Shown here in pieces: positions 2,396 to 50,800 of a stretch of 64,000 bases of DNA. The translations under genes and the position numbers were made by a program. The stretch covers positions 159,177 to 223,176 of the IMG/VR virus record IMGVR_UViG_3300028392_000029; one strand, written 5' to 3'. Each line of letters opens with the position of its first letter. Position 1 is the stretch's first letter. The notes under the pieces are model-generated. The model saw only the letters and a program-made list of their open reading frames with translations, was not told the DNA's origin and did not search any database.

Positions 2396-2423
2396 ATTAT
2401 ACAGTGATTGTAACTAAAATCAA
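2396..2423 (-). promoter_or_regulatory. sigma70-type promoter (TTGATT-N16-TATAAT), leaderless transcript
   Basis: Minus strand TTGATTttagttacaatcactgTATAATacaaatATG. Confidence 0.55.
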
Positions 2424-18879: not shown

Positions 18880-19509
18880 CTATGCTTTAACGATACGTTC
18901 AATCTTTGTTATTACGCCACCGAGATGCATTTTAGTCAACAGTAGTGTATTGTCGCCTGTTACATAGAAGTGTGTTCCGCCCCAACTTCTTGATTTTCCT
19001 AGCTCTTTTTTGCAACTTTTAGTCAGTTTTAGTTTGTCACGGCCAGCCGCCCATTCAACAAACGCTTGATAATCTTGGTTAGTTTTACCTAAAGTCACTC
19101 GATAATCGTAATTTGTTTTAGGCATTATTATAGTATTAGCCGCTAGAGGTGAATCTTTTGGTGGCTCAGATATATATTTCACATTGCTACTATCTAATTT
19201 AGACAGCAGAGTAACATAATCAAGGTTGTTAGTATATACGCTGACCCACGGAGATTCTACCCTAATTTCTATATCCTTCATTTTCTTCAAGGCAGTTGCA
19301 AGTCTAATAGCATAATCTAGCTGATCTTGAGTTTTGATATTATTAATACGCCACACATCGTCGGGCTTTTGAAGTAAAGAAGTTTTACTTAGTAGTTTTA
19401 ATGCAGTTTCCATATCACCGCTTCTAAACGAACTAGCGCCAGAACATATCAACACAATTTTGTATTGATATGTTCCTTTAAATAAACTTCTAGTTGTTTT
19501 GTACAACAT
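18880..19509 (-). CDS. Hypothetical protein
   Basis: 209-aa ORF overlapping the end of clpA. Confidence 0.75.
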   Translation of the reverse strand: MLYKTTRSLFKGTYQYKIVLICSGASSFRSGDMETALKLLSKTSLLQKPDDVWRINNIKTQDQLDYAIRLATALKKMKDIEIRVESPWVSVYTNNLDYVTLLSKLDSSNVKYISEPPKDSPLAANTIIMPKTNYDYRVTLGKTNQDYQAFVEWAAGRDKLKLTKSCKKELGKSRSWGGTHFYVTGDNTLLLTKMHLGGVITKIERIVKA

Positions 19510-21763
19510 CTTCTAAGTTGCTCTCAATAGCCAGTAATGCAATTTTAGATACTTTTGGTTTAGCAATTAACGAAATTGCATCGCCATCAACACTAATAGT
19601 GACCCAGCCGCCATTTTTAAGATCTCCAAACAACATCAATCGAGCAAGGTCGCGTTTAATTTCCTTGTCAATAACACGCTGTAACGGACGAGCACCCATC
19701 TTAGGATCAAAGCCTTTTTCGATGAGCCAATTAACTGCTTCCTTATCGATCTTAACTCGGATACCTTTATCTTTAACTTGGTCTTTAAGTTGATCTATAA
19801 ACTTATTAACAATTTTTATCATTGTTTCTTTTCCAAGTTTATTAAATGTAACAACACCATCTAAACGATTGCGGAACTCCGGAGTTAAGAATTTCTTCAA
19901 ATCAGCATCGCTATAGTCTTTATCTTGCTTACCAAATCCAATAGCATTTTTGTCTGCTGATTGTGCTCCGGCATTAGTAGTAAGGATAAGAACAATATTA
20001 CGGCAGTCAGCTTTTTTGCCATTTGATCCGGTAATAAATCCGTTATCCATAAGCTGTAGCAATACAGTTATTACATCTGGATGCGCTTTTTCAATCTCAT
20101 CTAGCAACAGTACAGCATTAGGTGCTTCTTGAATACTGGTAATTAGTTGACCCGCATTTTCTTCAAATCCAACATAACCGGGAGGGCTGCCGATCAACTT
20201 ACTGATACTGTGTTTTTCTTGATATTCACTCATATCAAAGCGCAGTAACTTAACACCCAAGTTTTTAGCAAGTGACTTAGCAGTTTCGGTTTTACCAGTA
20301 CCAGTCGGCCCCATGAATACAAACGATCCAACGGGTTTATTTTCTGTTTTAAGTCCAGCCTGTGCAACAACAATCTTATCAACGATTTCGGTGATAGCAA
20401 GTTCTTGCCCATACACTTCTGTTTCAAGTTTAGTTTGTAAACTAATTAAATTAACACTTTCAGTTTCTGAAACTTGCTCTTCCGGCATATTGACCATCTT
20501 AGCTAGTTCGAATTGAATTTCACGCTCGCCGATAATGCGCTCATCAGCTAGTTTGAGATTGAAGCGTGAGCAAGCTACATCAATTAAATCAATGGCCTTG
20601 TCCGGAAGTTTTTTATCTGTTTGATACTTAACTGACAATTTAATTGCCGCATCAATTGCATCGTCCTTGATCTTAACATTATGGAATCCTTCGTAGTATT
20701 TCTTAATACCTTTAAGGATCTGTTTAGTAACTTCTGTTGTAGGCTCGTCAACAGTAATGCGTTGGAAACGACGCATGAGCGCACGATCCTTTTCGAAGTG
20801 CTTACGATATTCTTCCCAGGTAGTCGATGCTACAACTTTAATATTGCCTTTGCTTAGTGCAGGCTTCATCATGTTGGCAAGATCGTTCGCTGAATTGCTT
20901 GCCGACCCAGCACCACTAATCATGTGTGCTTCGTCAATAAACAAGACAGTCTTACCTTTCTTTTGTAGGGCTTTAATAACATGCTTAAAGCGTTCTTCAA
21001 AGTCTCCGCGATATTTAGAGCCAGCTAACATAGCACTGATGTCTAGATTATAAACTGTATACTCTTTCAAGAAATCAGGAACAGCACCATTTACAATATT
21101 ATGAGCCATGCCCTCGGCGATCGCAGTCTTACCTACACCAGGGTCACCAACTAAGATCACGTTGTTTTTGCTACGACGACCTAGTGCTAACGCAATATTT
21201 TCTAATTCGTCAACTCTGCCAATAACTGGATCGATTTTGTTTTTCTTAACTTCTTGATTCAGATTAGTAGTAAATGCCTGAAGGGCTTTATCACTATGCG
21301 AATCAGCTGGGCTATCGTCCGGACCATTTTCCATATTATTATTTAAATATTCAGCAAATTTATCTTTATCGATATTAGCTTGTGCAACAAAAAAGTGCGC
21401 CCAACTACGTTTCTCGCCCATCATAGCCAAGAATACATCCGTTGGTTCAATACGCTGTCGCCCGTTGAATAGGACTTGAGTAAACGCCCTATTAAGTACA
21501 CGCTCTACACTTTGAGTTTTCTTAGGTTTAACCACTACATCTGGTACTGTAATTTCACTACATTTATTATGTAGATAATCTTGTAGGTTTGTTTTAAGGG
21601 AATTAGCATCAGCGCCGAATCCTTGAATACAGTTAGTAAACCCATCTTCTGCAAGCATAGCAAACAACAGATGTTCTATTGTTAGATATTCGTGATGAAG
21701 TTTTTTAGAAGTTTCTATAGCTCTTTCAAAGACTGCTTGAAGATTATCGCTAGGTTCGACCAT
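19490..21763 (-). CDS. clpA: ATP-dependent Clp protease ATP-binding subunit ClpA
   Basis: Clp N domain, GDPGVGKT, KYRGDFEER, GPTGTGKT, DMSEYQEKH, IGF ClpP-docking loop, GARPL. Confidence 0.95.
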   Translation of the reverse strand: MVEPSDNLQAVFERAIETSKKLHHEYLTIEHLLFAMLAEDGFTNCIQGFGADANSLKTNLQDYLHNKCSEITVPDVVVKPKKTQSVERVLNRAFTQVLFNGRQRIEPTDVFLAMMGEKRSWAHFFVAQANIDKDKFAEYLNNNMENGPDDSPADSHSDKALQAFTTNLNQEVKKNKIDPVIGRVDELENIALALGRRSKNNVILVGDPGVGKTAIAEGMAHNIVNGAVPDFLKEYTVYNLDISAMLAGSKYRGDFEERFKHVIKALQKKGKTVLFIDEAHMISGAGSASNSANDLANMMKPALSKGNIKVVASTTWEEYRKHFEKDRALMRRFQRITVDEPTTEVTKQILKGIKKYYEGFHNVKIKDDAIDAAIKLSVKYQTDKKLPDKAIDLIDVACSRFNLKLADERIIGEREIQFELAKMVNMPEEQVSETESVNLISLQTKLETEVYGQELAITEIVDKIVVAQAGLKTENKPVGSFVFMGPTGTGKTETAKSLAKNLGVKLLRFDMSEYQEKHSISKLIGSPPGYVGFEENAGQLITSIQEAPNAVLLLDEIEKAHPDVITVLLQLMDNGFITGSNGKKADCRNIVLILTTNAGAQSADKNAIGFGKQDKDYSDADLKKFLTPEFRNRLDGVVTFNKLGKETMIKIVNKFIDQLKDQVKDKGIRVKIDKEAVNWLIEKGFDPKMGARPLQRVIDKEIKRDLARLMLFGDLKNGGWVTISVDGDAISLIAKPKVSKIALLAIESNLEDVVQNN

Positions 21764-25304: not shown

Positions 25305-26039
25305 TTATTTCCTTTCTAGTGCAACGGCCCAGCCGTTGTTTTCAAATATAAATTTGTTACTAATCTTAGTAATATTATAGTTACCGATTATTTTAGTTAA
25401 GAATAATACTTCTGAAATATCTTTACCTTCTAGCATAATAGGACCACTGATACTATTATAAACTTCTGCCCTAGGTCCACTATTAACTATATTAAACTTA
25501 ATTTGTTCACCGTAGACTCTTTTAAATGTAATAGACTCGTCTATTAATTTTAATTCTTCTGCATAACTATTTTTAAAAAACTCACTAAAGTTATTTAATT
25601 TATGCTCTTCGGTTGCGATTGCATATGCATTTCTATCAGTGGGAACCACTGCTGATATATTTTCTTCGTTAGCAACTTCACTTTTAAAACTTTTAAAATA
25701 TCTAAATCGCATGTATTCTAAACCAGTTAGTAATATTATGCCATCTACGATTTCCATTATTTGTCTAGCCACATGCCGATTGCGTTCAAGTTCTACGTAT
25801 ACACGATAGTTGCCATCGTCAGTCTCACCTGGAGTAGCATCGGCATCTAGAACAAATTCATAGCCCATCTCGATAAAGTTTTCTAAATCTTTAGCGGCAT
25901 CTTCTTGATCTACAGTAAAACTCAACACAACAATATCTTCATCGTCGCCAGTTTTACTTTTAAATGAATCAATCTCAAACACTTTTTTAACTAAGTGTTC
26001 TAAATCACCTGCTCTAAGATTTTCTGTAATGTATGTCAT
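25305..26039 (-). CDS. Conserved phage hypothetical protein
   Basis: Start set at MTYITENL (26039); EIDSFKSKTGDDEDIVVLSF. Confidence 0.75.
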   Translation of the reverse strand: MTYITENLRAGDLEHLVKKVFEIDSFKSKTGDDEDIVVLSFTVDQEDAAKDLENFIEMGYEFVLDADATPGETDDGNYRVYVELERNRHVARQIMEIVDGIILLTGLEYMRFRYFKSFKSEVANEENISAVVPTDRNAYAIATEEHKLNNFSEFFKNSYAEELKLIDESITFKRVYGEQIKFNIVNSGPRAEVYNSISGPIMLEGKDISEVLFLTKIIGNYNITKISNKFIFENNGWAVALERK

Positions 26040-26040
26040 A

Positions 26041-26601
26041 TTATGCTGCCGGTGTAGGTGCCGCTCCTGCCGCCGGTGCGCCGGCTGCCGGTGCCGCCGC
26101 TGGTGCTCCTGCCGGTGCTCCACCCGGAGGCGGCGCCGCTGTACTTGGAGATTGTGATTCTTTATATTCGTTCTTCATCTTGTCCATGTAACCTTTGTAT
26201 ACATCAAATGCTAGTTTTTTTGGCATTTTAATTTCTACAATCCAAATAGGATGGCGATCTAATTTACCTTTTTTACTATTGGGTCTTAGATCTTCTTTCG
26301 TTCGTATTTTACGGGGCTCTACTAAGAAATTCTTTTGATAGGAAATTTTACATCCTAAATCAGTTAATCGCTTGCCACCGATGGGATCGGGCATCTTTTC
26401 TTCAGGCCACATGAATCCCACGGTAATCCAATGACGATCTACTTCAGGCCCATAGGCCAATTCGCCTTCTTCCCAGTTTTTGTAAACATACACATCTAGT
26501 TCGTCCAACACCCGTTCGAAATCTTTCAAAACAGCTAAACTACTGTTGTTTTCGTATAGATCCTGTATATTTTGTATAACGTCTAATATGTCGTGGTGCA
26601 T
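26041..26601 (-). CDS. Conserved phage hypothetical protein with an Ala/Pro tail
   Basis: LKDFERVLDELDVYVYKNWEEGEL...MPDPIGG; TAAATA at 26628-26633 upstream. Confidence 0.75.
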   Translation of the reverse strand: MHHDILDVIQNIQDLYENNSSLAVLKDFERVLDELDVYVYKNWEEGELAYGPEVDRHWITVGFMWPEEKMPDPIGGKRLTDLGCKISYQKNFLVEPRKIRTKEDLRPNSKKGKLDRHPIWIVEIKMPKKLAFDVYKGYMDKMKNEYKESQSPSTAAPPPGGAPAGAPAAAPAAGAPAAGAAPTPAA

Positions 26602-26680
26602 GAGTTGATCCTAGAGTCTTCTACACTTATTTAGCTGGTTTAAATCCATAACGTATCAGTTTATAATTCTGTAGATCCGT

Positions 26681-26760
26681 TAAATAATAGTGTAGGACCT
26701 CTGTAGTTATCAAGGCCGGTCACTACAAGTTCTACTTTTATTACAGTAAGAGTAGGAGCA
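26681..26760 (+). promoter_or_regulatory. TAAATA promoter plus a structured phoH leader with alternative anti-SD hairpins
   Basis: GTAGGAC/GTTCTAC plus TGTAGT/ACTACA stem competes with an SD-sequestering TTCTACTTTTA/TAAGAGTAGGA stem. Confidence 0.55.
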
Positions 26761-26767
26761 CAACTAG

Positions 26768-27487
26768 ATGAGTAAACAACGAGTGAAAAAGCGTTTTACA
26801 TCAGAAGTTAACATAATTGACTTTCAACCATATCTTCCTCAAAAGAAACAGCGTGTGAGTCTACATGCACGAAATCCAAATCAAAAAGTATACCTTGACA
26901 AGCTACAAGATGAAACTAAAAGTATCATTTTAGCTATCGGGCCAGCAGGCACGGGTAAAACTATGTTGGCAGTGCAAGTAGGAGTTAAGCTGTATCAAGA
27001 AGGTATTGTTGATAAGATAATTGTAACAAGACCCGCCGTCAGTGTAGATGAAGATTTAGGATTTTTACCAGGTACGCTAAATGAAAAAATGGCACCTTGG
27101 ACTCGTCCTATATTCGACGTTCTAGGAGAGTATTACCAGCAAAAAGACATAGCTAAAATGCTAGAGGATGGAACCATTGAAATAAGCCCACTCGCGTACA
27201 TGCGTGGACGCACATTTAAAAACGCATACATTGTTGCAGATGAATGCCAGAACACCACAGTCAATCAAATGAAAATGTTACTAACTCGTTTAGGCGATGG
27301 TAGTAAGATGGTTGTTACGGGTGACTTGGCTCAGGCTGATCGTGTTAGTGATAATGGTTTAATAGATTTTTGTAACTTACTCTCATCTAAACCTGCTCTA
27401 AAACATATCGACATAGTACAATTTGAAGCTAAAGACATTGAACGCCATAATGCCGTGAAGGAGGTGTTAGCGGTTTATGGAGACTAA
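26768..27487 (+). CDS. phoH: PhoH-family ATPase
   Basis: GPAGTGKT, TRPAV, GFLPG, MRGRTF, DECQN, TGDLAQAD. Confidence 0.95.
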   Translation: MSKQRVKKRFTSEVNIIDFQPYLPQKKQRVSLHARNPNQKVYLDKLQDETKSIILAIGPAGTGKTMLAVQVGVKLYQEGIVDKIIVTRPAVSVDEDLGFLPGTLNEKMAPWTRPIFDVLGEYYQQKDIAKMLEDGTIEISPLAYMRGRTFKNAYIVADECQNTTVNQMKMLLTRLGDGSKMVVTGDLAQADRVSDNGLIDFCNLLSSKPALKHIDIVQFEAKDIERHNAVKEVLAVYGD

Positions 27488-27488
27488 A

Positions 27489-27514
27489 AAATAGGAGCAT
27501 GGACGCTCCTATTT
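27489..27514. terminator. Bidirectional intrinsic terminator between convergent genes
   Basis: AAATAGGAGC-atggac-GCTCCTATTT with A/T tails. Confidence 0.8.
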
Positions 27515-27533
27515 AGAATGTTATAGCAATTTG

Positions 27534-28289
27534 TTACTTGATGGGAAGTTCTATATCGTGGACATCAACGGTATAGGACTTCTTCTCTCTTATGTGACGT
27601 ACCCAACTAGTAAAAGACATTTCTTTAAGATAAGACAGTGAGTTATGTCGTTTGATCATGGATTGTGTAAGCTCGCCTGAAAATGCAGTAATCTCTTCTC
27701 GTTTAAGAGGGATAACTTGTACTAACGGTTCGCCCATCTTGATGACAGTTGTTTTAGGTTGCTTCAACATAATATTAATAGGTTGAATCAATGGTACCTT
27801 ATCATGATCAATGATCCCGGGAATAGCTTCCCAGTTACGTGAGTCGTCATAATAATACATAGGTTGCCAAAACAAACTGTAACCCTTTGCCGCCCACACA
27901 GTCCATGGATTATCAAGTTTAACTGGAGTGCCAAACTTAAATTTATTACCCATGAATCCCTGTAGGGCATCTTTAGGTTGAGCACCTTCTTTATATTTAG
28001 GATGGCTATAGCGGGTAACTACTCTGCCATTCGGACCCGGTTCAATTTCAATATCACACCATGCAGGAATAACAAATCCAGTACTACAGTAATCAATAAT
28101 TCCAGGGCACGATTTAACAGTTTTATCACTGTCAATGGGCTTTGCAGATTTCTTGTAGTACAGCGCCATGTCCTTAAATGCAGGCGGTAAAAACTCGCTT
28201 GCTGGACGGATTGGTGCATGGTGTCTAATAGCCCACTCGTCGCAGGCAAAGTAAATCTGATGCTCAAGTTTTTTCTTAAATGGCCACAT
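27534..28289 (-). CDS. Phage hypothetical protein (possible dUTPase-like beta fold)
   Basis: KSCPGIIDY...GFVIPAW...NPW...PGIIDHD...GEPLVQVIP. Confidence 0.55.
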   Translation of the reverse strand: MWPFKKKLEHQIYFACDEWAIRHHAPIRPASEFLPPAFKDMALYYKKSAKPIDSDKTVKSCPGIIDYCSTGFVIPAWCDIEIEPGPNGRVVTRYSHPKYKEGAQPKDALQGFMGNKFKFGTPVKLDNPWTVWAAKGYSLFWQPMYYYDDSRNWEAIPGIIDHDKVPLIQPINIMLKQPKTTVIKMGEPLVQVIPLKREEITAFSGELTQSMIKRHNSLSYLKEMSFTSWVRHIREKKSYTVDVHDIELPIK

Positions 28290-39115: not shown

Positions 39116-41863
39116 TTAGCTAATGCTTACTCTGTGTATAGTCAGTCTACAGCCGCTGGCAAGATCGATATTTGCTCCGCTAGCATTCCTTAAAACAAAA
39201 CAATGAATGGTGTCCCCGGCGGTGGCTTGAACCACAGTTGAATAGTGTAGATATCGCCCCGACCATGCATCCTGCATGATTGTGACTGTTTTAGCACCGT
39301 CACTGCTGTCTATGAGGAAAAAGCTACCTGAGTTTAATGTCACTGATGTTGAGAAATATATTGACACATTGAATTGATAGTATCCTGTATATGGTGCTGT
39401 GAATACACCATTGGCGTATGCATTAGCAGTGTCCACTGTTTCAGTAAACAGAATGTAGGCGGCACTTGCTTGATCTATGATTGTTCTTGTAGTTGATGTT
39501 TGGGCAATCACTGTGACAGGTTTGTAACTGGCAATAACACTGGCATCTGGTAATGTTATCTGGCCACTACTTCCAAAAATATAATTGTTACCGCCCACTT
39601 GTAGTGTAATGGCATTTGATAAAGTATTTGACAGCGTGTCTCCACTGAACGCAAAATTACCCAAACTTGGTGCGGATCCGTAGGTAACTTCTTTAGTTGT
39701 GGTGTTGTAATATAACACATTGGATGTTGCTGTGGCAGTTCTAATTGGTGCCACATAGAAACTGTTGGGTTGTTCGGCAACACTATTGACTATAACACCG
39801 CTGGCATTTAATATGATGGTGTTGGCCGCTTGGTTGTTGTCTCCCGCCCTATAACCGATTGCTATGGCATTGGCACCTTGGCCGCCTAGGCCGGCTTGCT
39901 TACCAATGGCCACGCTGTTTACACCTTGTAAGTTATACCCAGCACCAAAGCCCACAGCCACTGCACCTTGACCTTGCACGGATATTCCAGCCAAGGCACC
40001 AATGGCCACTGTTTCAGTTCCTTGGTCACTATTACCCGCTTGTGTGCCAATGGCCACTGCATTGGCACCTTGTGAGGTTGTTCCGGCATCTTCACCAAAT
40101 ACCACACTATTACCCGCAGTGTCTTTTATCACTGCACCGTTGGGCAATGTCAATGCACCATCCGTGCCAAATGTAAAATTATGTGGAACTGTGCTTGAGG
40201 TTGAAAAAGATACACTACGGATACCCGTATTGTTAGGCAGTGTGCCGTCTACTCTACCACTCACACGCTGCCAGGTTGGATGTGCTGGATCGTATTGTCC
40301 TTGAGTTGTGAACGCCTGTGTTATGGTGCCAGTAAACAAATTAGGCTGGCCACCGGATGTTTCATACACCACACCCATACCCGTGCCCAGAGCCAGTCCA
40401 GTCACATAGGTCACAAACGCAGGGGTTCCGAACAGGGCAAACTCAATCTGTGACGGATTGCGTTGATACCATCCCTGTATAAATGTGCCGTTTACTGTTA
40501 TGTCTCTTGAGAAGGCTTGCGCATTGTTATAGGTCGGACTGGTGGTAACCACTGTTTCCTGAGTGGTAACTGCAAGCGCAGTGTCTACCGCAGATTTAAT
40601 GGTGTTGCTGGGAAATGTCAATACACCAGTTGAAGCAAGACTCAATGTGCTGCCACCGTTGACCAAACTACTCACACTGCCAGTCCAGGCTGTGGTCTGT
40701 ACAGAAGCGTCTGGGAATGTTAAGCTACCATCTGTGCCAAGACTCCACTGTTTAACACCACCAGAAGTTTGTGTTTCAATTTGCAACACTTTGTTAAGAT
40801 CAGCGGTTATAGTAGAGTAAGGCGTGCCATTTTTCCGAAAGGTGAGTCCTGACGGCAATGTTAAGACGCCACTAGAACTAAGGCTCACAGTTTGTGTGCT
40901 GTTGACTAATGTGCTTACACTGCCAAGCCAGGCTGTGGTTTGTACCGTGGCATTGGGGAATGTTAAATTACCATTCTTGCCAAAGGTCCAGATACTGTTT
41001 GTTGCCCCAGGCTTATAAAAACTCCAAGATGAAACGCCAAAAGTATCGCTAGCACCTGTGAAGTCGTCAGTACTTAAAGTTATACGCCATTCCCCAATAT
41101 TAGCGTCAGGAGCAGCCACAGCAGTTATTTGCATTACACATGTTCTACTAATCACATAGTCACCAACAGCGACTACGGTTGCCCAATTGGGTGCTGAAGA
41201 AATTGAGAACACTAGGGTAAAAAAATCACTGTAAAGAGCACTAAGGTTAGATAGGTAATAAGCGCCAGTTTGTATTTTTATATCCAATGCTGATTTTATT
41301 TTTGACCCAACTCCAGCCATGATATCAAAATTTGGCAATGTTACTGTGCCATCCGAGCCAAGGCTCACTGTGCGAGCACCGTTGACTAATGTGCTTACAC
41401 TGCCACTGCTGGCAGTAACAACGCCACTGCCATCTATACTTAGGCCAGTGCCAATTTTGATACCACCCAATATGGATGCGGATGCTGTGGGCAATGTGTA
41501 AGCACTGGGTATGGTGGGCTTGTTGGTCAAGTCTGTATATGAACCACTGAACAATGTGGGTTTGTTCAGTATAACTCCTAATCCACTAGATGCAGTCCAG
41601 TTGCTTTGTACCTGTGCCGCCGCCCCAGTTAGTAATATTTTGTTATTGGCATCATCATAGGTCACCGTGATGTTGGTGTGACTGGCATGTGTGAACAAGG
41701 GTGCCGCATAGTCCTGTGCCAGTTCAATCAAAGCCGCACTTGAACCGCCAGTTAAGGCATACAGTTCTGTGAAGTTTGCATTTACTTTTATAAACGCATT
41801 ACGAAGTGTATCACCGCTTTTGTCGTTGGCACTAGCACCAACTAGGATATTTTGTTTAGACAT
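39116..41863 (-). CDS. Tail fibre/receptor-binding protein with YadA-like head repeats and a C-terminal C1q-like domain
   Basis: ANDKSGDTLRNAF N-terminus; repeated AVAIG; GVFTAPYTGYYQF. Confidence 0.8.
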   Translation of the reverse strand: MSKQNILVGASANDKSGDTLRNAFIKVNANFTELYALTGGSSAALIELAQDYAAPLFTHASHTNITVTYDDANNKILLTGAAAQVQSNWTASSGLGVILNKPTLFSGSYTDLTNKPTIPSAYTLPTASASILGGIKIGTGLSIDGSGVVTASSGSVSTLVNGARTVSLGSDGTVTLPNFDIMAGVGSKIKSALDIKIQTGAYYLSNLSALYSDFFTLVFSISSAPNWATVVAVGDYVISRTCVMQITAVAAPDANIGEWRITLSTDDFTGASDTFGVSSWSFYKPGATNSIWTFGKNGNLTFPNATVQTTAWLGSVSTLVNSTQTVSLSSSGVLTLPSGLTFRKNGTPYSTITADLNKVLQIETQTSGGVKQWSLGTDGSLTFPDASVQTTAWTGSVSSLVNGGSTLSLASTGVLTFPSNTIKSAVDTALAVTTQETVVTTSPTYNNAQAFSRDITVNGTFIQGWYQRNPSQIEFALFGTPAFVTYVTGLALGTGMGVVYETSGGQPNLFTGTITQAFTTQGQYDPAHPTWQRVSGRVDGTLPNNTGIRSVSFSTSSTVPHNFTFGTDGALTLPNGAVIKDTAGNSVVFGEDAGTTSQGANAVAIGTQAGNSDQGTETVAIGALAGISVQGQGAVAVGFGAGYNLQGVNSVAIGKQAGLGGQGANAIAIGYRAGDNNQAANTIILNASGVIVNSVAEQPNSFYVAPIRTATATSNVLYYNTTTKEVTYGSAPSLGNFAFSGDTLSNTLSNAITLQVGGNNYIFGSSGQITLPDASVIASYKPVTVIAQTSTTRTIIDQASAAYILFTETVDTANAYANGVFTAPYTGYYQFNVSIYFSTSVTLNSGSFFLIDSSDGAKTVTIMQDAWSGRYLHYSTVVQATAGDTIHCFVLRNASGANIDLASGCRLTIHRVSIS
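40901..41405. repeat. 25-bp identical direct repeat, 480 bp apart, inside the tail fibre gene
   Basis: gttgactaatgtgcttacactgcca at 40901-40925 and 41381-41405; a third diverged copy near 40660. Confidence 0.9.
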
Positions 41864-44800
41864 TATGATCTCCCTACTGCAACTTCGATTACGCCCACAC
41901 TATCGTAGTCTTTGTCCTGGATAGCCTTACCAATAATACTGCCAATCTGTGGATTAGTTGACTTGACTGCGCAACCCTCTACAGCTGATGTTGTTAGTAA
42001 ATCACCCTTCTTAACTCGACCAACTACTCGGCACGGAATACGACCTGCTAGTGCTAGACAGACCTTGATGCCCTGTTGTCCTTCGTTCATTACATAAGCC
42101 GGGTTAGTTGTTACTACACCTGCTAATCTAGTGTCGTTAAATGTAGTAGTTGAAGTAACTTCTTTGTCACCACCAAACACTAACACCCAACCTTCTGGAT
42201 ATTCTTGATCACCTTCATAGAACTCAGCCAAGTCAGCATATGTACTGCGTAGTTGACTACCAGTTGTTAAACTCCAGTTACCATCAATAGTACCAGCGGC
42301 TGTACTTGATCCAGCTGTTAAGTTATTTGATTTTAATATACCTAGGCTAAAATCAAACTGGCTACTAGCCGTCAAGTACCACTGACCCTCCATTGATCCA
42401 CCAGTAGCAGGTGCACCAGCAGTAAATGTTGTAGCAACTAATGTTCCGTTGCTGGTATTTAAAGTACCCTGTGTAGTAATAGTAGTGTTACTGCCAGTAG
42501 TACCAACAGCAGTCATGTAGTAGAATGGAGTTGCTTGAACTATACCACCTGGGGTACTATGTTGTACAGTAGTTCCGCTAGTTGATAGTACTGTGAAGCC
42601 TCCAACTTTTAAGTTAGCAACGTCGGCACTTCCATCAACCCCAGTTTTAAGTATTTGATTAGCACCACGAGTTGAAGTAATACCAACTACAGTATATGAA
42701 TTATTTGCACTGTTAGATCCGTCATAGCCTACGACCATAGCACCACTTGCGCCAAACGATCCATTACTAATACCACCGGCAGCATTTAAAATCTGTGTTG
42801 GTGTTACTTCTGACGGACTAGCGGCGCTGGCAGTTAAATTACCAAGCACAGTTCCAACACTCATCTGTTGTATTTTACTATAGGTAATACCGGTTATAGC
42901 ACTAGTACTGGTTAATAAATCAATCCAACCGTTGGTACTGCTAAATGACGAGCTGTTAAAACTAGCTATACCTAAATCAGCTTGCGCAATTCCAGTGTAG
43001 TTAGCTCGAGTCGTAGCCGCAGTCATTGCCAGCTTGCTTTGCGCGATTGCCGCGCTAGCATTAACATCGGCGTTGACAATTGCTCCGGCATTGAGGTTGG
43101 TAACTATAGTGCCGGTGCCCGAGTTGTAGGTGATCGATAAATCACCTGTAGGAGCCGCAACGTTTTTCCACTTACCCAACCCGACATCGTACACTAAGAA
43201 CGATCCCGATGACACAGCATTTAAGAAGAATATAGTTCCACTTGGGTTGCTGTTCGGATATGTTCCTAGAGTAATTGTGGCAACACCTGCGCCGCTGATA
43301 CTCACACTTTGAACGATCTGAGTACCGTCAAATCCAGTACCATACACTGCTAACCCGCTAGTAATACTTCCACTGATGTTGTTAACTGTTAACACATAGC
43401 TAATACTACTGCCGCTTAGATACAGGCCCCTGCCAGCGGCAATGCCCACATCTAGCAATTTGAATATCGAGTTTAATGCAATCAAACTTTGGTCAACATA
43501 ATCTCTGTTAGCCCCGTCATACTTGCTAGTACTGGTACTTGGCATTGTTAAATTACCAATACTAAAGTTACCTAAATTTAAATTACCCTTCATGGCTAGT
43601 GTGCCGTTAAGTGCTAGATATCCTGGGCCGATCAAACTAGTTGTAGCTACTGGACTACCGCCATAGTCTAAACCTAATCTGTTGTCAATGAAACTACGAG
43701 TAGCACTTTGTACCGGAACAATGTCCGGTGCGTTATCAGTCATTGTAGGATCAGTTGAGAATTGAGTAACAACAACACCGCGTTTAAATCCTAAACCGTC
43801 CAAGTTACTAAGGGCAATACTTGCTGAGAATGTAACAGTACCAGTGCCCTGGTCAACGCTGAAGAATCGACCTACACGGAATATACCGTTTTCGTCTGTG
43901 GTCACATAGAACACACGACCTACTGTTTCTTCTTTAACTTGATTACTACCGTTTGACTGTATTGCCGGATTACCGTAAATTTGTACAGGATAGTTAGTAG
44001 TAACATACCCGCCAGTACCGATATCTAAGAAGTCATGTCCCGTAGCTCGGCAAGTACTAATACGTGTGGTAATTTGAGCCGCTGATCCAGCTGGTCTACC
44101 TAGACGCAGGGTAGCACTGGTAAGAGTACTAAATGGTCTTCCAATACCTAGCGTATTGCTAGAGCCACTAGTTACTTCTAAAGTCACAGTAGTATTAAAC
44201 GCTGTACTCCATGTACCCGGATCTTGAGGATATGTTAGTGTAATAGTTGTGGCGCTACTTGCACTGCACAAATAGAATCCGTTGTACAATGGATTGTTGT
44301 TACCCGAAACAAGATAATAGCTTCCTGTAACGGGCGCAGTTGTTGTGGCAAAATTCAATACCACACTGTAAGTCGGGCCAGTACCGATGATAGTCTTACT
44401 TGTAAATCCAGTACTAGCATCAACTGCAAGACTTGTACCATATCCGTAGTTTGGAGAATACAATGACAACAGAGTTCCTACACTAACACTACCAGACGAT
44501 ACGGTTATATCGCTTCCACCTAATGAAGTAGCAATACCGATAGATGTTCCTGCTACTTTGTTAATGTAGTACAATGTATTTGGAGAAACTCCGTTAACTG
44601 GCGTTAAGATGGTCCCAGTTCCAAATGCCGAGCCACTGAATGTAATCTGTTGTCCAGCATTTAATCCGGTAGCCGATGCAACTGTTAATAGATTTGCCAG
44701 CCCTGAAATACTAGTACTGGAAACAGTTTGACTTGCACTAACTGTGTAACTGGTACCGACAATACCAATATTAATTCCGTTAGTAGCCGCACCACTGAGT

Positions 44801-47800
44801 GTGAACGGGCCGGTGCCACTGGCAATATATGTTCCGGTAGGTATACCGGTCCCCACCAACACCATACCAATACTTGGAGCAGTACCTGATACAATAGTTA
44901 ATGTAGTTGTACTTGTAATAGTTCCAACAAACGTTGCACTATTAACAGCAGTAATATAAGTTCCAGTAGTTACTCCAGATCCGGATAATACCATACCGAG
45001 GACAGGAGTGCCAGATGCTACAGTAGTTAAACTTAATGTAGTACCTGTAATCCGTCCAGTAGAACTTAATGTGCTATTAGTAGTTGCAGTAACATTTGAA
45101 TTTGCTCCCGGGTCGGTTGGATACAACAATGACATGGTCACAGTATTTGTACCAGCACTGGCTGTTGTAGCAACGGTAGCTGTTGATGTTAGCACTGGTG
45201 TAAGCAATACGCTACCCAATGCAGGTGTTACTGTAATAATAGGTTGAGAAGTGTATCCGTATCCTGGACTCACTAACACATAGGCTACGATACTACCGTT
45301 GGCAATAGTTACTGTTGCAATGGCTTGACTTGTCGCACCACCGCCTGAGAACACAACGGTTGGAGGATTTGCTGGATCAAATCCACTACCACCATTGGTA
45401 ATTGTAATACTTTGTACGGTAGCTACTAAACTAGAACTTACTATACTGCCCGATGGAATCCAAACAGCAGGAGCCACTGTAAATTTAGTTGTACTATCAA
45501 TACTTTGGATAATAGTTCCACTAGGAACATATGCGCCAGTGCTGGTAGATGATACTACCATGCCTACAGATAAACTAGAAGTAGATGATACTGTTAGTTG
45601 ACTGCTGTTAACAATGCCAGCAATCTGCTTGCTTCCGTTATAACTAGTATTACTGTTATTTGCTATGGTAATATAACTGTCGACCGCAGGTAACTGTGCC
45701 GTCGGACTGTATGGAATATTAAATGTTACAATCTTAGCAGTTGTACTACCTGTTTGCAGTACACTACTAGCATAGGTCATGGAATTGATAACAGTTCCAT
45801 CGGCCGCTAAGTTGCTTATTGGGTTAGGGTCAACACTTAAATATCCGTTGGCTGTAACACCAAATGTAACAGTGCCAGTTGGAGGGTTAACTGTAGCCGC
45901 GCTACTCAAGGTGATTGTTGCTGTATTTACACCACCAGAATTAGATATAACAACAGTTGATACAGTTTGTGTTCCGTTGAATCCTGTACTACTGCCAGTA
46001 CTTGTTAAGATTTGACCTTGACTAATTGTACCTGCAAGACCGTTAACTACTAGTGTATAAGTTGGCCCAGCTGTTACAGTATAGCTTACAAACAACCCTG
46101 TTGAAATAGTCAGTGGCGCAGTATAACTAATAACTCTATGTGTACGACCACCCCAGCCAACTACATAAGTTCCTTTGTTAATTTGATTAATGGTTGATGC
46201 CGAACTAACGGCTAACACAGCAATTTTGTTATCTCCAACCTTACTACCTTGAGTTTTAGTAGCGTCAGTTGGATCCAATTGCGTTATATTATTACCATCG
46301 GTTGTAAATTTATAATAGCTAAAGCTAGCATCAGTTTGTAACACTGATATGTTTGCACCTAAAGTTTCTCCAGTTGCCTCAGTTAACCCATATGCAATTA
46401 CTCGATAAATTTCAGATAAATTGTCAACATACTGTAACGCAGTACTTGGACGTACAGGTTTAACGTTATCAATATTATTGAATTTTATAGCTTGTAATAC
46501 TCTAAAGGTCACAGTTTGACCGTCATATAATGCGTATTGTAGTCCAGTGCTTGAAGTACTGTCAGTGCCTGCGGTACTAAGAGTTACAGATAATATGTTT
46601 TTACCATTGATAGTAACAGTGGTGTGTGCAATTGTTGATATTAGATATCGAACAATGCCGCCACTCTGTACACCGTGATCAATTTCCAGTTCGCTGGCAG
46701 TGTATGGAGCATATGAGTATCCGGTAATGTATAGAGTGACAGACTGTTTAGTTGAAGTTGGAGTCATCTCATTAACAAACAAACCTTGCTTGTATATACG
46801 AGCTACCTGAACCATATCATAGGATAAGTTTACACTATCGGGCAATTCTGTTACGTCGTATCCTGTAGCACGTAAACCATAAACACCGTGTGAGTTAGAA
46901 CCAGCAATACTTCGAACTTGACCGCCATTGTTGGCCCAGTAGCCTGTGTAACAGTAATATGAGAATGTAGATACTTGTTCAGTCAATCCACCGTTGGTTG
47001 CAAATACACCATAACCTAAATCGTTAATTTGTGTAAAGTCGTTAGCCAACATGGACTTATTACCGCCCATTTCAATATTGATACCTAGACCGGCACCACT
47101 GTTTAAGTAGGCAACTGATCCAGATAACAATGTAGATTTCAATCCCTGTAATGTAGTGTAATCACTAGATCTAGTTTGACTTGAATACCATGATTGACTT
47201 GCAGGGGTAGTACGTGTAGTTGGCGTATCAAAATCACCATCTGCAACATAGTCAGTTAGAATTGCAATCTCGGTGTTTACTAATCCTGCTTCAGTTGCGG
47301 TTGCCACAGGCAAACTTATATTTTGAGTATATGGATTACCAGCAGATTTACTTACAGTTTGATTTTGAACAACCTGTTGCATAACAGTATTCAATCGACC
47401 GTATGCCGCAACGCAGTAAGATTCTTCTCCTAAGATTTGACTCACACCGCTGCCGTAATAACTTAGCGATACATCATAGATGGCGCTATTACCACCATAC
47501 ATAATATCGTAACAGATAGCATCAATAATAAATCCTGTATCTCTTTGAGATTTAAGGGCGTTATAATTAGGAATAGTGTTTACGTTATATGTACTAGCAA
47601 TCCAAGCAGACACTTCCTGTTGTAAGAATATTCTGTTAGCTTGTAAAATATTTTTTGCCTTAACAGCATTAGGATTGTTATAAGTACCACCCGGTGTTGG
47701 GAAGGTAGTCGCTGGCACGGTAGTAACACCGTTATTGATCATGTTAGTAATTGTAAGCAAACTTGCCGCAATTGAATTCTTGCCAGTAGTTGATACACTA

Positions 47801-50800
47801 CCTAAATTAGAATTAACATATGCTAGACCTTGAGTTGTAAACAATGTAGCTAAAACAGTTAAACTATTCTGTGGGAACAAATATGTATAACCTGAGAACA
47901 AACTCTTATAGTTAGAACCAGTTACCATGTCTAGACCAATATTGTCTATAACACCACCCAACGCAGTTGTAAATTTAGTTGTGTTGTAAAAATTAGGCGG
48001 ATAGAAAGGTGTACCAGTATCAATTGTTAGCACCACTGTATAGGTTGCCGCATTAAAACTTACAACATCGTTAACTTGGAAGCGATTACCTTGTATATAG
48101 AAAGCGCAAGGAGTTTGTGGAGCACGAATATCAAGTCCGCTGTTAACACTTCCAACAACGGTAATTTGTGTACCATTAACACCTGCAATATTTTGTTCTA
48201 CCCTAGTAATTTTACCAAACAAACGTCCAGTGAATCCATCAATGAATTGACCGCCAGCAAATCGTTTGTAATTGATACTTTGACTAAAGCTACCGCTCTC
48301 TTGAGCATAAGGTGATTTAGTTTTAATTTGTCCTTCTGGATCAAGTACCATGGCAAATCCGCCGTGTCCTTGCATGCTGATCATTCTAACACGAGTAGCA
48401 TCATTACATAAGAACACATCCATTAATCTATTGTTTAGCGGAGTACTATTAATATCTAACGGATCAGTTAAGTAGTGTCTTCCGTAATTAATTGTACTGT
48501 ACAAATGCCAAGCGCCAACAGCATATGTTGTTGCGGCAGCAAAAGGATAAATCACTGTTAAGTTTAACACATTACCACTGATAGTGCTAACAACAGCTTT
48601 ACCCGGAGTTCCGGTACCGCTAGTGCTGTCAGTGAATACTAATCCTAGCCAACTTGCCGGTGCTTGACCAGTACCTAGTGTAGCTGTGATTGATCCTGTT
48701 ATACCGCTGAGTGTAATAGTTGATCCAGTAGTGGCAGCATAATCGGTACCACTATAATCAATAATACCAGTCTGTATGCCGTCAATGACACTGTCTCTAT
48801 AAAAGAACACACTGCGCCATGGGCTTTGACTTACACGATCTAATGGACGTACAATAACACGTCGGAAGTCATCACCAGAAATTGTTACGTTTGCAGATAA
48901 TTTGATTGGGTAATCTTCATAGTAGGTACCGCTTTCAACACAGATAGCAATGTTTTGTTCCGGAACAGTTTCACCGTAGTCTATTTCTTCCCCTACTCTA
49001 AAGAATCCTGGACGAACCATCCTTACTGTGATAGTGTCATATGAAGTAGTTACACCTGGAGTGTATGTTACAATTTGGCCGTATGCATTGCTAGTTCCAC
49101 CGACTAGTATTTTGGCAGGAATAATGTGTACCGCACCTGGTATACCTTGGTCTACAAATCCGTTACCGCCGTTGTCAAATGTAATAGTATACAAGCCCGA
49201 GCCAAATGTAGGGGTTGGAGCCGCACCATATCCATTTGTAATAATACTAATTAAAGTATTCATGTTTGTGGTAAATGTAGTTTTTGCAGGAGTACTTGGC
49301 GACTTTGCAACACCATTCACCGTTGTTTGTTGTCTTACTAGATCTTGGAATCGTGTTTGCTGGGTTTTATTAAGTACCTGAATACCGAGATTTTTAGCAA
49401 ACACAATACCGTCTAATGTTTCACGTAACTGAGATCCAATGGCAATAGCTTTTGCTGATGCATTTTTATAATAGCTTTTACCAGCATTGACGCTTTGATA
49501 AGTTCCGCCTGTTAGTATATCAATAATCATTGCATCAATGATGTATCCAATATCTCGATAACAAGTTGCTTCATTATAATTAAACCCGCCTGGATATGTA
49601 ACAGCGAGGTATGCAGTAGTTGCGTTTCCTATAGTATCTTTACTGTTATTTAAAATTACTTGTGCAGCCTGGGGAATACTTGCATAAATTGTTAAGTCTG
49701 GAAGAGATTGGGTATAGGTTGTATCGTTAGCAACAATATCTGTAACATAATTGAACAATGCATTAATGTCTCCGGCTGCCGCGGCACCGTCAACCCATAC
49801 TGCGTTTCTTACCTGTACAGCACTGTTACCAGTTGCAGGAGTCACTACTGAATTTGACGACACAAGAATAGCAACCGCCTGTGCATGAGTAATTGCTGCC
49901 ACTGTTGCAGTTACTTCATTGCTGGCGATTTGTCTAGTGCCACCGGCCCAATATTGATATGCGGCTCTCAGTGTTGCTGAATTACCACCATATGTTAGAT
50001 CGTAACAGACTGCTTCTAATATAGATTTCACATCTCTACTGCAAGTGGTGTTACTATATACTAAAGATGGGTAATTGGTATTAATCCAAGCAATAGTATC
50101 TGCGGCAATAAAATCAATATTGGCCAATATGGCCGAACGTGCGTGAGCAGTTGTAACTGTTATCGATGGCGGGTCAATAAATGTTGGAACAGACCTACTG
50201 GCAATACCAGCTGTTAATAAGTTAGTAATAATCCCAAACAAACTTGTAATTGTAGAACTGACGGTCACATTATTGATTACTGAGAATGTTGAATTGATAT
50301 AGCTAATCTCAGCTGACTGGATTGCAGATTTCTTCGCAATAATTGCAGTTCTAGCAGTATTCAAAGTAGCACTGGCATTGGCTGTCGTTGGCCCGTACAC
50401 TACTGGATTAGGTGTACTTACACTATTAACGATCCCGGCAATCGTTGCTATGTTGTTTGATATTGATGTGCTGACAATTGTTGAGCCGCCCAATGTTTGA
50501 TTGATATACTGATATACACTCAATTGATACACAGTAGTAGTCGAAACATTATTAATGATCGCTTGACACAATGTATTAATATAATTAATTGCGGCGACGG
50601 TGGCAGTTTTTTCATACTGAGCAATTTGTAAAGTATTGCCTATCCAATATTGAAGTCCAGAGTAAACACTGTTACTGTTACCACCGTACATAAAGTCGTA
50701 GATCAAACTCCATATAATATATTTTACATCTCGCTTACATGTGGCAGAACTGTAGCTTAGTGTTGGATAGTTTGCTAATAAGAAAGCAATAATCTCTGCT

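What the first reader, a model, noticed from the sequence alone, without database searches (positions are those of the whole stretch)
26681..26770. Two-state RNA switch in the phoH leader
Seen: after a TAAATA promoter, GUAGGAC (26692-98) pairs with GUUCUAC (26729-35) and encloses UGUAGU/ACUACA (26702-07/26722-27). Alternatively UUCUACUUUUA (26730-40) pairs with UAAGAGUAGGA (26747-57) and buries the AGGAG SD. The two folds exclude each other. Known: PhoH proteins are ATPases, some with RNA-binding or helicase activity. Inference: a ligand-, protein- or autoregulated translational switch on one of the few plus-strand genes.
Basis: partly seen in the sequence, partly recalled or inferred. Interest (0 to 1): 0.6.

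Follow-up and report, generated by a model that had tools for sequence, protein, structure and literature searches.

The report
Bistable RNA leader of phage phoH
The untranslated leader of the phoH gene in an uncultured freshwater jumbo phage is a strongly conserved RNA, absent from Rfam, that can fold in two exclusive ways, one hiding and one exposing the ribosome-binding site, so it probably gates translation of a protein whose function is still unknown.

Summary
All helices lie at the stated coordinates.

One sequence alone is not convincing (fold z = -1.25). The comparative evidence is.
- Every one of 260 related phage contigs with enough upstream DNA carries the leader, always directly before phoH.
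- It occurs once in this 223-kb phage record and has no Rfam match.
- Fold A (P1 + P2) is paired in 99% of cells, with compensatory changes at 4 pairs.
- The SD-burying hairpin (fold B) is paired in 97%.
- G-U wobbles work only on the + strand, so this is RNA, not a DNA operator.
- The a-to-b segment is 86% identical while third codon positions are 45%.

It coexists with fold B.

The two states are predicted to be nearly isoenergetic (median 1.5 kcal/mol), insensitive to temperature, and separated by about 15 kcal/mol.

Best reading: a bistable translational gate. Its input (protein, ligand or folding kinetics) is untested. This is a new RNA family of a known kind.

The parts
26681..26686 (+). 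TAAATA, a promoter-like element resembling the core of the T4 late promoter. The predicted start of the mRNA lies about 5-6 nt downstream, at or next to G26692.
   Evidence: It is invariant in 95 leaders and TAAGTA in one clade. TAAATA sits 17-30 nt before the start codons of many minus-strand genes of the window, while ATAAATA is depleted overall. The start site itself is inferred, not measured.
26692..26698 (+). Strand a (GUAGGAC): the 5' arm of P1 and a near copy of the SD region. It acts as the anti-anti-SD.
   Evidence: It pairs with 26729-35. Pairs 2, 5 and 6 of P1 show changes on both sides in relatives.
26699..26701 (+). J1/2 internal loop (CUC) in fold A. In fold C it is paired with the apical loop.
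   Evidence: It is nearly invariant in the main clade and absent in the L221/L215 clade.
26702..26707 (+). Strand a' (UGUAGU): the 5' arm of P2.
   Evidence: It pairs with 26722-27. U-A changes to G-C at the closing pair in L221/L215, and 39 leaders have U-G there.
26708..26721 (+). Apical part of the hairpin. It holds P2a (AUC 26709-11 with GGU 26718-20) and the loop AAGGCC. GGUC at 26718-21 is also the partner of GACC of strand a in fold C.
   Evidence: In P2a, AUC changes to ACU or AUU and still pairs. RNAalifold predicts P2a independently. This window has C at 26716, where over 90% of relatives have G.
26722..26727 (+). Strand b' (ACUACA): the 3' arm of P2. In fold C it pairs instead with GUAG of strand a.
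26729..26735 (+). Strand b (GUUCUAC): the anti-SD strand shared by P1 (fold A) and the SD hairpin (fold B).
   Evidence: Nearly all its substitutions are C-to-U or A-to-G, which keep pairing with both partners.
26730..26757 (+). Fold B, the SD-sequestering hairpin: 26730-41 with 26746-57, loop 26742-45.
   Evidence: One search gives the structure. It is paired in 97.4% of cells in relatives, with U-A to A-U swaps, while its loop is hypervariable at 25% identity.
26754..26758 (+). Shine-Dalgarno AGGAG. The first four bases are buried in fold B.
   Evidence: GGAG is invariant in all but one of the leaders aligned.
26768..27487 (+). phoH coding sequence (239 aa). It has a PhoH ATPase domain only, plus a basic N-terminal arm.
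   Evidence: Pfam PF02562 at 3.2e-72. NCBIfam PhoH and PhoH2 helicase models match below their cut-offs. Alignment.
27489..27514 (.). Hairpin directly after the phoH stop codon, terminator-like on the opposite strand. It closes the one-gene cassette.
   Evidence: Most of the commonest homologous loci shown carry a canonical bidirectional intrinsic terminator here.

Best explanation
The roughly 77-nt phoH leader is a cis-acting bistable mRNA element that gates translation initiation.

It has five segments in order:
- a (GUAGGAC)
- a' (GUAGU)
- b' (GGUC-R-CUAC)
- b (GUCCUAC)
- c (GUAGGAG, the SD)

In the OFF state, a pairs with b' (fold C) and b pairs with c (fold B), which buries the SD. In the ON state, a pairs with b (P1) and encloses the a':b' hairpin (P2/P2a), which leaves the SD free.

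Shown:
- Both P1/P2 and the SD hairpin are maintained by selection on the + strand RNA.
- They are mutually exclusive.
- The element is specific to phoH.

Predicted from energy models:
- The favoured fold flips as each segment is transcribed: first C, then A, then C plus B.
- The finished states are nearly isoenergetic.
- A barrier of about 15 kcal/mol separates them.

Inferred:
- The choice is made during transcription.
- The ON conformer is a metastable or factor-stabilised state that allows a limited amount of PhoH synthesis.
- Something that binds the conserved P2 apex, most plausibly a protein and possibly PhoH itself, or the speed of transcription, sets the ON/OFF ratio.
For: Distribution
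- The core pattern gave at least 120 hits in viral contigs, all immediately upstream of phoH.
- All 260 loci with enough upstream DNA have the leader.
- There is one copy in the 223-kb record.

Structure
- Fold A is 99.1% paired, with 4 pairs changed on both sides, reached by 0 of 500 shuffles. RNAalifold predicts the same fold.
- The L221/L215 clade changes P1 U-A to C-G and P2 U-A to G-C. It loses the internal loop and most of the apical loop, yet keeps all three pairings.
- Fold B is 97.4% paired in a region aligned without any structure.

Strand: dozens of G-U pairs would be C-A mismatches on the other strand.

Selection: identity is 86% for a-to-b and 88% for c/SD. It is 45% at third codon positions, 25% in the fold-B loop and 46% in the SD-AUG spacer. 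Stems that are this invariant, with almost only wobble-compatible changes, fit strands that each have two partners.

Energetics
- The truncated RNA a..b' folds as C in 98 of 100 leaders. Through b it folds as A in 97 of 100.
- For the full length, ON minus OFF has a median of +1.5 kcal/mol, and 53 of 100 leaders lie within 2 kcal/mol.
- The difference is unchanged from 5 to 45 C.
- Barriers are 14.5 and 15.9 kcal/mol.

Context
- Other TAAATA-preceded genes have this element only 17-30 nt before the start codon. phoH has it 81 nt upstream.
- There is no upstream start codon for a leader peptide.
Against: - There is no experimental datum: no mapped 5' end, no probing, no reporter. If transcription started inside strand a, the ON state could not form. 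Covariation of a with b argues that a is transcribed.
- True compensatory changes are few and come from a handful of clades, because the family is shallow (PhoH at least about 73% identical).
- Fold C has no covariation. It is merely 97% compatible.
- Predicted energy differences of 1-4 kcal/mol are within model error.
- In the L221 and some other clades the ON fold is predicted to be clearly more stable, by up to 7 kcal/mol. The poise is therefore not uniform.
- Several unpaired bases are more conserved than pairing alone explains, which points to an unidentified binding partner.
- A sigma-70-like promoter on the opposite strand overlaps 26684-26713 and may add sequence constraint.
Confidence: 0.6

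Rival explanations
1. Protein operator. The conserved P2/P2a hairpin apex is the binding site of a phage protein, with PhoH (a predicted RNA-dependent ATPase or helicase relative with a basic N-terminal arm) the obvious candidate. Binding shifts the a/b/c competition and gives autoregulation of translation. This is one candidate input of the best explanation, not an alternative architecture.
For: - The apical loop and junction bases are nearly invariant while neutral positions are saturated.
- PhoH here matches the PhoH2 RNA 5'-3' helicase model over its ATPase domain (4.8e-37, below cut-off) and has a Lys/Arg-rich N-terminus.
- A 2026 preprint reports lineage-specific structured RNAs encoded next to PhoH2 genes in bacteria (10.64898/2026.10.21.760802).
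- Autoregulation through a leader hairpin is established for T4 gp32, gp43 and RegA and for ribosomal proteins (general knowledge).
Against: - Nothing here tests binding.
- The L221/L215 clade has replaced the apical loop and lost P2a and the internal loop while its PhoH stays 78% identical. A fixed protein-RNA interface is therefore not universally kept.
- The preprint's RNAs are long (357 nt) and go with PIN-PhoH proteins, not this architecture.
Confidence: 0.25
2. Small-molecule riboswitch. P1, the internal loop, P2 and the apical loop form a 44-nt aptamer for an unknown metabolite, for example one related to nucleotides or phosphate. Ligand binding stabilises P1 and frees the SD.
For: - It has the classical anatomy: a conserved aptamer-like core with covarying stems, variable peripheral loops, and an expression platform that shares one strand with P1.
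- The unliganded equilibrium favours OFF by a few kcal/mol, a gap that ligand binding energy could plausibly bridge.
Against: - No Rfam family matches even at E = 10.
- The L221/L215 clade lacks the internal loop and most of the apical loop, so it has no conserved pocket.
- Most conserved 'unpaired' bases are accounted for by pairing in fold C or P2a.
- The motif is tied to one gene family in one phage clade, so gene context gives no hint of a ligand.
Confidence: 0.15
3. No switching. P1/P2 is simply a 5'-terminal stabilising stem-loop that protects against 5'-end-dependent decay. The SD hairpin is a constitutive damper of translation. Their overlap is incidental.
For: - The hairpin starts within a few nt of the predicted transcript 5' end.
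- PA5oct, the nearest cultured relative, also has a hairpin right after ATAAATA-N5 upstream of phoH, but a different one.
- Both states keep the 5' end paired.
Against: - Strand b varies almost only in ways compatible with both partners.
- a and c are kept as near copies of each other across the whole family, including the diverged clades.
- Near-isoenergetic states in about half of the leaders and sequential flips in at least 97% are not expected from two independent hairpins.
Confidence: 0.15
4. DNA-level element. The inverted repeats are an operator, or part of the divergent promoter region shared with the upstream minus-strand structural gene. Their conservation would then reflect protein-DNA contacts.
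For: - The region lies in a 166-bp divergent intergenic space.
- A good sigma-70-like promoter (TTGATA-18-TATTAT) lies on the minus strand at 26713-26684.
Against: - Pairing is kept through G-U wobbles that exist only in the + strand RNA: 24 U-G, 12 G-U and 39 U-G at single pairs.
- Half-sites covary.
- The TT of the putative -35 is not conserved, since the loop reads UAUCRR.
- The minus-strand gene has its own TAAATA 26 nt before its start codon.
Confidence: 0.03

Closest known systems
Translational riboswitches with three-state expression platforms, such as the Vibrio vulnificus add adenine riboswitch (general knowledge)
   Same: One strand is shared between the P1 helix of a 5' structured domain and an SD-sequestering helix. 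An additional alternative pairing of the 5' strand gives a binding-incompetent OFF conformer.
   Different: No ligand is known or indicated. There is no Rfam match. The putative pocket is not conserved in one clade. The element is half the size of a purine aptamer.
Delayed-folding or kinetic-trap leaders: the MS2 maturation-protein 5' UTR and hok mRNA metastable hairpins (general knowledge)
   Same: The equilibrium fold hides the SD, and a transient co-transcriptional fold leaves it open. The predicted sequential refolding (C, then A, then C plus B) and the barrier of about 15 kcal/mol fit this logic.
   Different: Here the ON fold is a nested two-helix hairpin at the very 5' end, and all elements lie within about 70 nt. 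There is no long-distance 5'-3' pairing and no antisense RNA. The kinetics are only predicted.
Phage lambda cIII mRNA alternative structures A and B (general knowledge)
   Same: A phage mRNA sits in equilibrium between two conformers, one occluding and one exposing the ribosome-binding site.
   Different: The cIII equilibrium is sensitive to temperature and Mg and involves the coding region. The phoH leader is predicted to be insensitive to temperature and lies wholly upstream of the start codon.
T4 late-promoter-dependent RBS unmasking in genes e, soc and 49 (general knowledge)
   Same: A T4-late-like TAAATA element sits directly at the edge of a hairpin that decides RBS access. The transcript 5' end therefore determines which fold is possible.
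   Different: In T4 the late start removes the inhibitory arm. Here the predicted start includes the activating arm, and both folds are available to one transcript.
PhoH2-associated structured ncRNAs (bioRxiv 10.64898/2026.10.21.760802)
   Same: A conserved structured RNA is encoded immediately beside a PhoH-domain gene, and the RNA differs by lineage.
   Different: Those RNAs are long multistem molecules (357 nt in the lead case) next to PIN-PhoH (PhoH2) genes of bacteria. This one is a 77-nt mRNA leader of a PIN-less 239-aa phage PhoH.

Membership tests
Any Rfam 15 family | The covariance-model score reaches the family's gathering threshold. | tested here: not met
   There was no relevant hit even at E <= 10 on 26300-27100, and none at gathering score in the whole window.
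Riboswitch | A conserved structured domain in the 5' leader, with stems supported by covariation. | tested here: met
Riboswitch | An expression platform whose helix is mutually exclusive with an aptamer helix. | tested here: met
   Strand b (26729-35) is shared by P1 and the SD hairpin, and both are conserved.
Riboswitch | A ligand-binding core conserved in all members. | tested here: not met
   The L221/L215 clade lacks the internal loop, P2a and most of the apical loop.
Riboswitch | Direct, specific binding of a small molecule. | not testable with these tools
   This needs in-line probing, ITC or a similar assay.
RNA thermometer | SD access shifts with temperature in the physiological range. 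| tested here: not met
   The predicted G(ON) minus G(OFF) has a median of 2.1 kcal/mol at 5 C and 1.7 at 45 C. This is a prediction only.
Transcription attenuator or intrinsic terminator | A hairpin followed by a conserved U tract, and for peptide-dependent attenuation a leader ORF. | tested here: not met
   The U run after P1 is replaced by AUCCCC in a clade and covaries as part of fold B. There is no start codon between 26692 and 26767.
Autoregulatory translational operator (T4 gp32, gp43 or RegA type) | The encoded or a dedicated protein binds the leader and changes translation. | not testable with these tools
   Only circumstantial evidence exists: a conserved apex, a basic N-terminus and similarity to a helicase model.
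Kinetic-trap or delayed-folding leader | The equilibrium fold of the full leader occludes the SD. | tested here: inconclusive
   OFF is favoured by more than 2 kcal/mol in 40 of 100 leaders. The states lie within 2 kcal/mol in 53 of 100, and ON is favoured in 26 of 100. These are predictions within model error.
Kinetic-trap or delayed-folding leader | A nascent-chain intermediate leaves the SD accessible. | tested here: met
   When transcribed through b, fold A is the minimum-energy structure in 97 of 100 leaders. This is a prediction only.
PhoH2-associated ncRNA (preprint) | It lies next to a PIN-PhoH gene and is a long multistem RNA. | tested here: not met
   The protein has a PhoH domain only, 239 aa. 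The RNA is about 77 nt.
DNA inverted-repeat operator | Symmetry is equally valid on both strands. | tested here: not met
   Many G-U pairs would be C-A on the minus strand.

The most novel reading that the evidence does not exclude
The leader is the specific RNA partner or sensor of phage PhoH. Either it is an orphan riboswitch for a metabolite tied to PhoH's unknown function, or it is the cognate RNA that PhoH binds or remodels, giving autoregulation. In both cases it would provide the first direct handle on what this very widespread phage auxiliary gene does.
Probability: 0.3. Interest if true: 0.85.

Novelty: new member of a known kind. Interest (0 to 1): 0.6.

Why it matters
phoH is one of the most widespread 'auxiliary' genes of phages and is used as a marker of phage diversity, yet its biochemical role is unknown.

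This leader is more conserved than the second codon positions of the gene it precedes, and it belongs exclusively to that gene. That says expression of PhoH must be tightly gated in these jumbo phages.

It also offers a small object of 45-77 nt that can be tested directly. Finding what shifts its two states (a metabolite, PhoH itself, or transcription speed) would point to PhoH's function.

It is also a compact natural example of a five-segment strand-exchange switch whose predicted balance does not change with temperature.

Tried and rejected
- **Rfam.** Nothing matched at permissive or gathering thresholds.
- **RNA evidence for the 5' end.** Only Logan contigs were available. One lake metatranscriptome holds exact pieces of neighbouring DNA, but nothing defines a start site.
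- **A repeated promoter word.** GTWAAATA is not enriched. The real signal is TAAATA near start codons.
- **Second copies.** There are none in the window or the genome.
- **Long-range pairing of the SD with the 3' terminator.** The window's terminator stem contains UAGGAGC, but terminator sequences differ freely in relatives. Rejected.
- **Pho box upstream.** The second half-site is not conserved. Rejected by eye.
- **Mimicry of the 16S 3' end.** This was compared with a 16S sequence recalled from memory. The similarity was at chance level, and I dropped it.
- **Thermometer.** Rejected on predicted insensitivity to temperature.
- **Terminator or attenuator.** Rejected.
- **The same motif in cultured relatives.** PA5oct, Phosso and Atu_ph07 have PhoH 45-51% identical over the whole protein (54% for PA5oct over the tblastn match). 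The model finds nothing upstream of their phoH.
- **Covariation for fold C.** None was found. One possible C-G to A-U change in the L129 clade depends on the bulge register, and I do not count it.
- **Not used.** The large protein searches, structure prediction and complex prediction would not have changed the verdict. No alternative genetic code was named.

Full report
**What is in the window.**
GUAGGAC (26692-98) pairs with GUUCUAC (26729-35). UGUAGU (26702-07) pairs with ACUACA (26722-27). The alternative is 26730-40 with 26747-57, which covers AGGA of the AGGAG Shine-Dalgarno (26754-58), ten bases before the ATG at 26768.
- The ORF 26768-27487 is a 239-aa PhoH-domain ATPase (Pfam 3.2e-72). 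NCBIfam PhoH and PhoH2-helicase models match below their cut-offs.
- It is the only credible + strand gene among the 41 long ORFs of the window.
- It sits between a divergent virion-protein gene and a convergent gene, with a hairpin right after its stop codon.
- The window is part of a 223-kb virus record judged about 60% complete, so this is a jumbo phage. The record also encodes a DNA polymerase, a clamp loader, a Lon-like protease and an endolysin.
- The nearest cultured relatives by PhoH are PA5oct-like Pseudomonas jumbo phages (54% identity). PA5oct shows the same local gene order.

**Is it more than chance?**
- Not on one sequence. The minimum-energy fold has z = -1.25.
- Relatives decide the matter. 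A PhoH search of viral contigs found 432-488 relatives from freshwater metagenomes.
- A DNA pattern for the hairpin core gave at least 120 hits, every one directly upstream of a phoH start.
- All 260 fetched loci with at least 110 nt of upstream DNA carry the leader, in 121 distinct versions.
- A covariance model built from them (R1) finds exactly one copy in the window (78.8 bits) and one in the whole record.
- Rfam has nothing like it.

**Evidence for the helices.**
- *Fold A on the plain MAFFT alignment of 95 leaders:* P1, P2 and a 3-bp extension P2a are paired in 99.2% of cells.
- *Fold A on the model-based alignment of 100 leaders:* it is 99.1% paired, against 21-58% when partners are slid. 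Four pairs have changes on both sides, reached by 0 of 500 shuffles. That alignment is fitted to fold A.
- RNAalifold predicts the same structure on the same alignment.
- *The most telling variant is the L221/L215 clade.* P1 changes U-A to C-G, and the P2 closing pair changes U-A to G-C. The internal loop is gone and the apical loop is shortened to AAAYGGUC.
- *Other changes also keep pairing.* There is a G-C, G-U, A-U series at P1 pair 5, an A-U to G-C change at pair 6, and AUC to ACU in P2a.
- *Fold B:* the SD hairpin is paired in 96.4-97.4% of cells, against 48-65% slid. It has U-A to A-U swaps, and its region was aligned without any structure.
- *Strand:* the many G-U pairs exist only on the + strand, so the selected object is the RNA, not a DNA palindrome.

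**Strength of selection.**

| Region | Mean pairwise identity |
|---|---|
| a through b | 86% |
| SD strand c | 88% |
| phoH second codon positions | 85% |
| phoH third codon positions | 45% |
| SD-AUG spacer | 46% |
| Fold-B loop | 25% |

- At this divergence a simple hairpin would be expected to show many compensatory swaps. Instead the stems are almost frozen.
- Strand b changes almost only by C-to-U and A-to-G, which keep pairing with both a and c. This fits strands that each serve two partners.

**A third helix.**
- The minimum-energy fold of the window pairs strand a plus the following CCUCU with the 3' part of the apical loop and the 3' arm of P2. In the window this is 26692-26702 with 26713-26726. 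The helix coexists with fold B.
- It explains why GGUC in the loop and CCUCU in the junction are conserved, and why GGUC survives in the L221 clade.
- It is 96.7% compatible across the family but nearly invariant, so no covariation supports it.
- I treat fold C as likely but unproven.

**Energetics (ViennaRNA predictions).**
- Truncated at b', 98 of 100 leaders fold as C. Extended through b, 97 of 100 fold as A.
- For the leader through the AUG, enforcing P1 against enforcing the SD hairpin gives a median difference of +1.5 kcal/mol (interquartile range -0.1 to 2.8). Of 100 leaders, 53 lie within 2 kcal/mol. The window's value is +3.8.
- The ensemble difference barely moves between 5 and 45 C.
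- Direct-path barriers are about 14.5 (ON to OFF) and 15.9 kcal/mol (OFF to ON). Spontaneous exchange should therefore be slow.
- These numbers fit a bistable element whose state is set during transcription or by a factor. They are predictions with errors of a few kcal/mol, and some clades are predicted to favour ON clearly.

**Promoter and transcript.**
- TAAATA is invariant 4-5 nt before strand a and is TAAGTA in one clade.
- In the window the same word sits 17-30 nt before the start codons of many minus-strand genes, although ATAAATA is depleted overall (11 found, 26 expected). Cultured relatives have ATAAATA-N5-G before phoH.
- This resembles the T4 late promoter core (general knowledge) and would place the 5' end at about 26692, making P1 a 5'-terminal helix. 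phoH would then have a leader of about 77 nt, where other genes have roughly 11-24 nt.
- No measured 5' end exists. The RNA contigs available were uninformative. Covariation of a with b is the only evidence that a is transcribed.
- Most of the commonest homologous loci shown end phoH with a canonical bidirectional terminator. The gene is therefore a self-contained cassette.

**Mechanism and rivals.**
- My best reading is a translational gate built from five segments (a, a', b', b, c). OFF is a:b' plus b:c. ON is a:b enclosing a':b'. I hold this at 0.6.
- The input is open.
- *Protein operator, possibly PhoH itself (0.25).* It fits the frozen apex and the basic N-terminus, and a recent report of RNAs paired with PhoH2 genes.
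- *Small-molecule riboswitch (0.15).* It fits the anatomy, but the L221 clade, which lacks the putative pocket, weakens it.
- *Factor-free kinetic timer.* It fits the predicted folding order and barrier.
- *Two unrelated hairpins (0.15).* This is disfavoured by the dual-partner substitution pattern.
- *A DNA-level element (0.03).* This is disfavoured by the strand asymmetry.
- Thermometer and attenuator readings fail their tests.

**Comparison and novelty.**
- It works like the expression platform of a translational riboswitch, or like delayed-folding leaders such as the MS2 maturation gene, hok and lambda cIII.
- It is a member of none of them. The model finds no counterpart upstream of phoH in the nearest cultured phages.
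- It is a new RNA family of a known kind.
- Its value is that it belongs exclusively to phoH, a ubiquitous phage gene of unknown function, and is small enough to test directly.

Noticed in passing
window, minus strand: 59761, 54020, 39109, 31649, 26633, 23950, 14739 (first base of TAAATA): TAAATA, usually preceded by A or GA, lies 17-30 nt upstream of the start codons of many minus-strand genes. ATAAATA is depleted in the window as a whole (11 found, 26 expected). It looks like a T4-late-type promoter word of this phage.
   Followed up: partly
window 26684-26713, minus strand: A consensus-like sigma-70 promoter (TTGATA-18-TATTAT) on the opposite strand overlaps the P2 loop and the TAAATAAT box. 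Its -35 TT is not conserved among relatives. The divergent gene has its own TAAATA at 26633.
   Followed up: partly
window 26716: This phage and three identical metagenome contigs (L001-L003) have C where more than 90% of relatives have G in the apical loop (GGCCGG instead of GGGCGG). Its strand b also carries a G-U in P1. It is predicted to be among the more OFF-biased leaders (+3.8 kcal/mol).
   Followed up: partly
window 27489-27514, and homologous loci: A hairpin lies directly after the phoH stop codon. In most of the commonest relatives shown it is a textbook bidirectional intrinsic terminator (A-run, GC stem, T-run), so phoH is a one-gene cassette on the opposite strand from its neighbours.
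   Followed up: yes
L362 (PA5oct 190092-191939), L363, L364: The nearest cultured relatives by PhoH are PA5oct-like, Phosso and Atu_ph07 jumbo phages. PA5oct has the same gene order around phoH. It also has a different 5' hairpin right after ATAAATA-N5, with the SD partly paired (z = -2.4). The design may be analogous, but the RNA is not homologous.
   Followed up: partly
window 41863-53667, minus strand: A single open reading frame of 3,934 aa. It is flanked by other very large ORFs of 1,397, 915 and 904 aa. Two of these have no PHROG match and the 904-aa one matches a virion structural family. The 3,934-aa ORF itself was not scanned.
   Followed up: no
window 19490-21763, 2420-3640 and 61916-63277, minus strand: These ORFs match a Lon-like ATP-dependent protease (E = 6e-248), a tryptophan-halogenase-like protein and a radical-SAM-domain protein. 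This is unusual accessory content for a phage.
   Followed up: no
window 26041-26123: The listed ORFs 25305-26123 and 26041-26601, both virion structural families on the minus strand, overlap by 83 nt. The downstream ORF's GTG start is probably called too far upstream.
   Followed up: no
window 26013-26274, 26471-26610, 27197-27469, 27479-27629: A lake metatranscriptome run (X7) holds contigs identical to these stretches, so the phage or its DNA was present in an RNA library. No exact contig covers the leader itself.
   Followed up: partly
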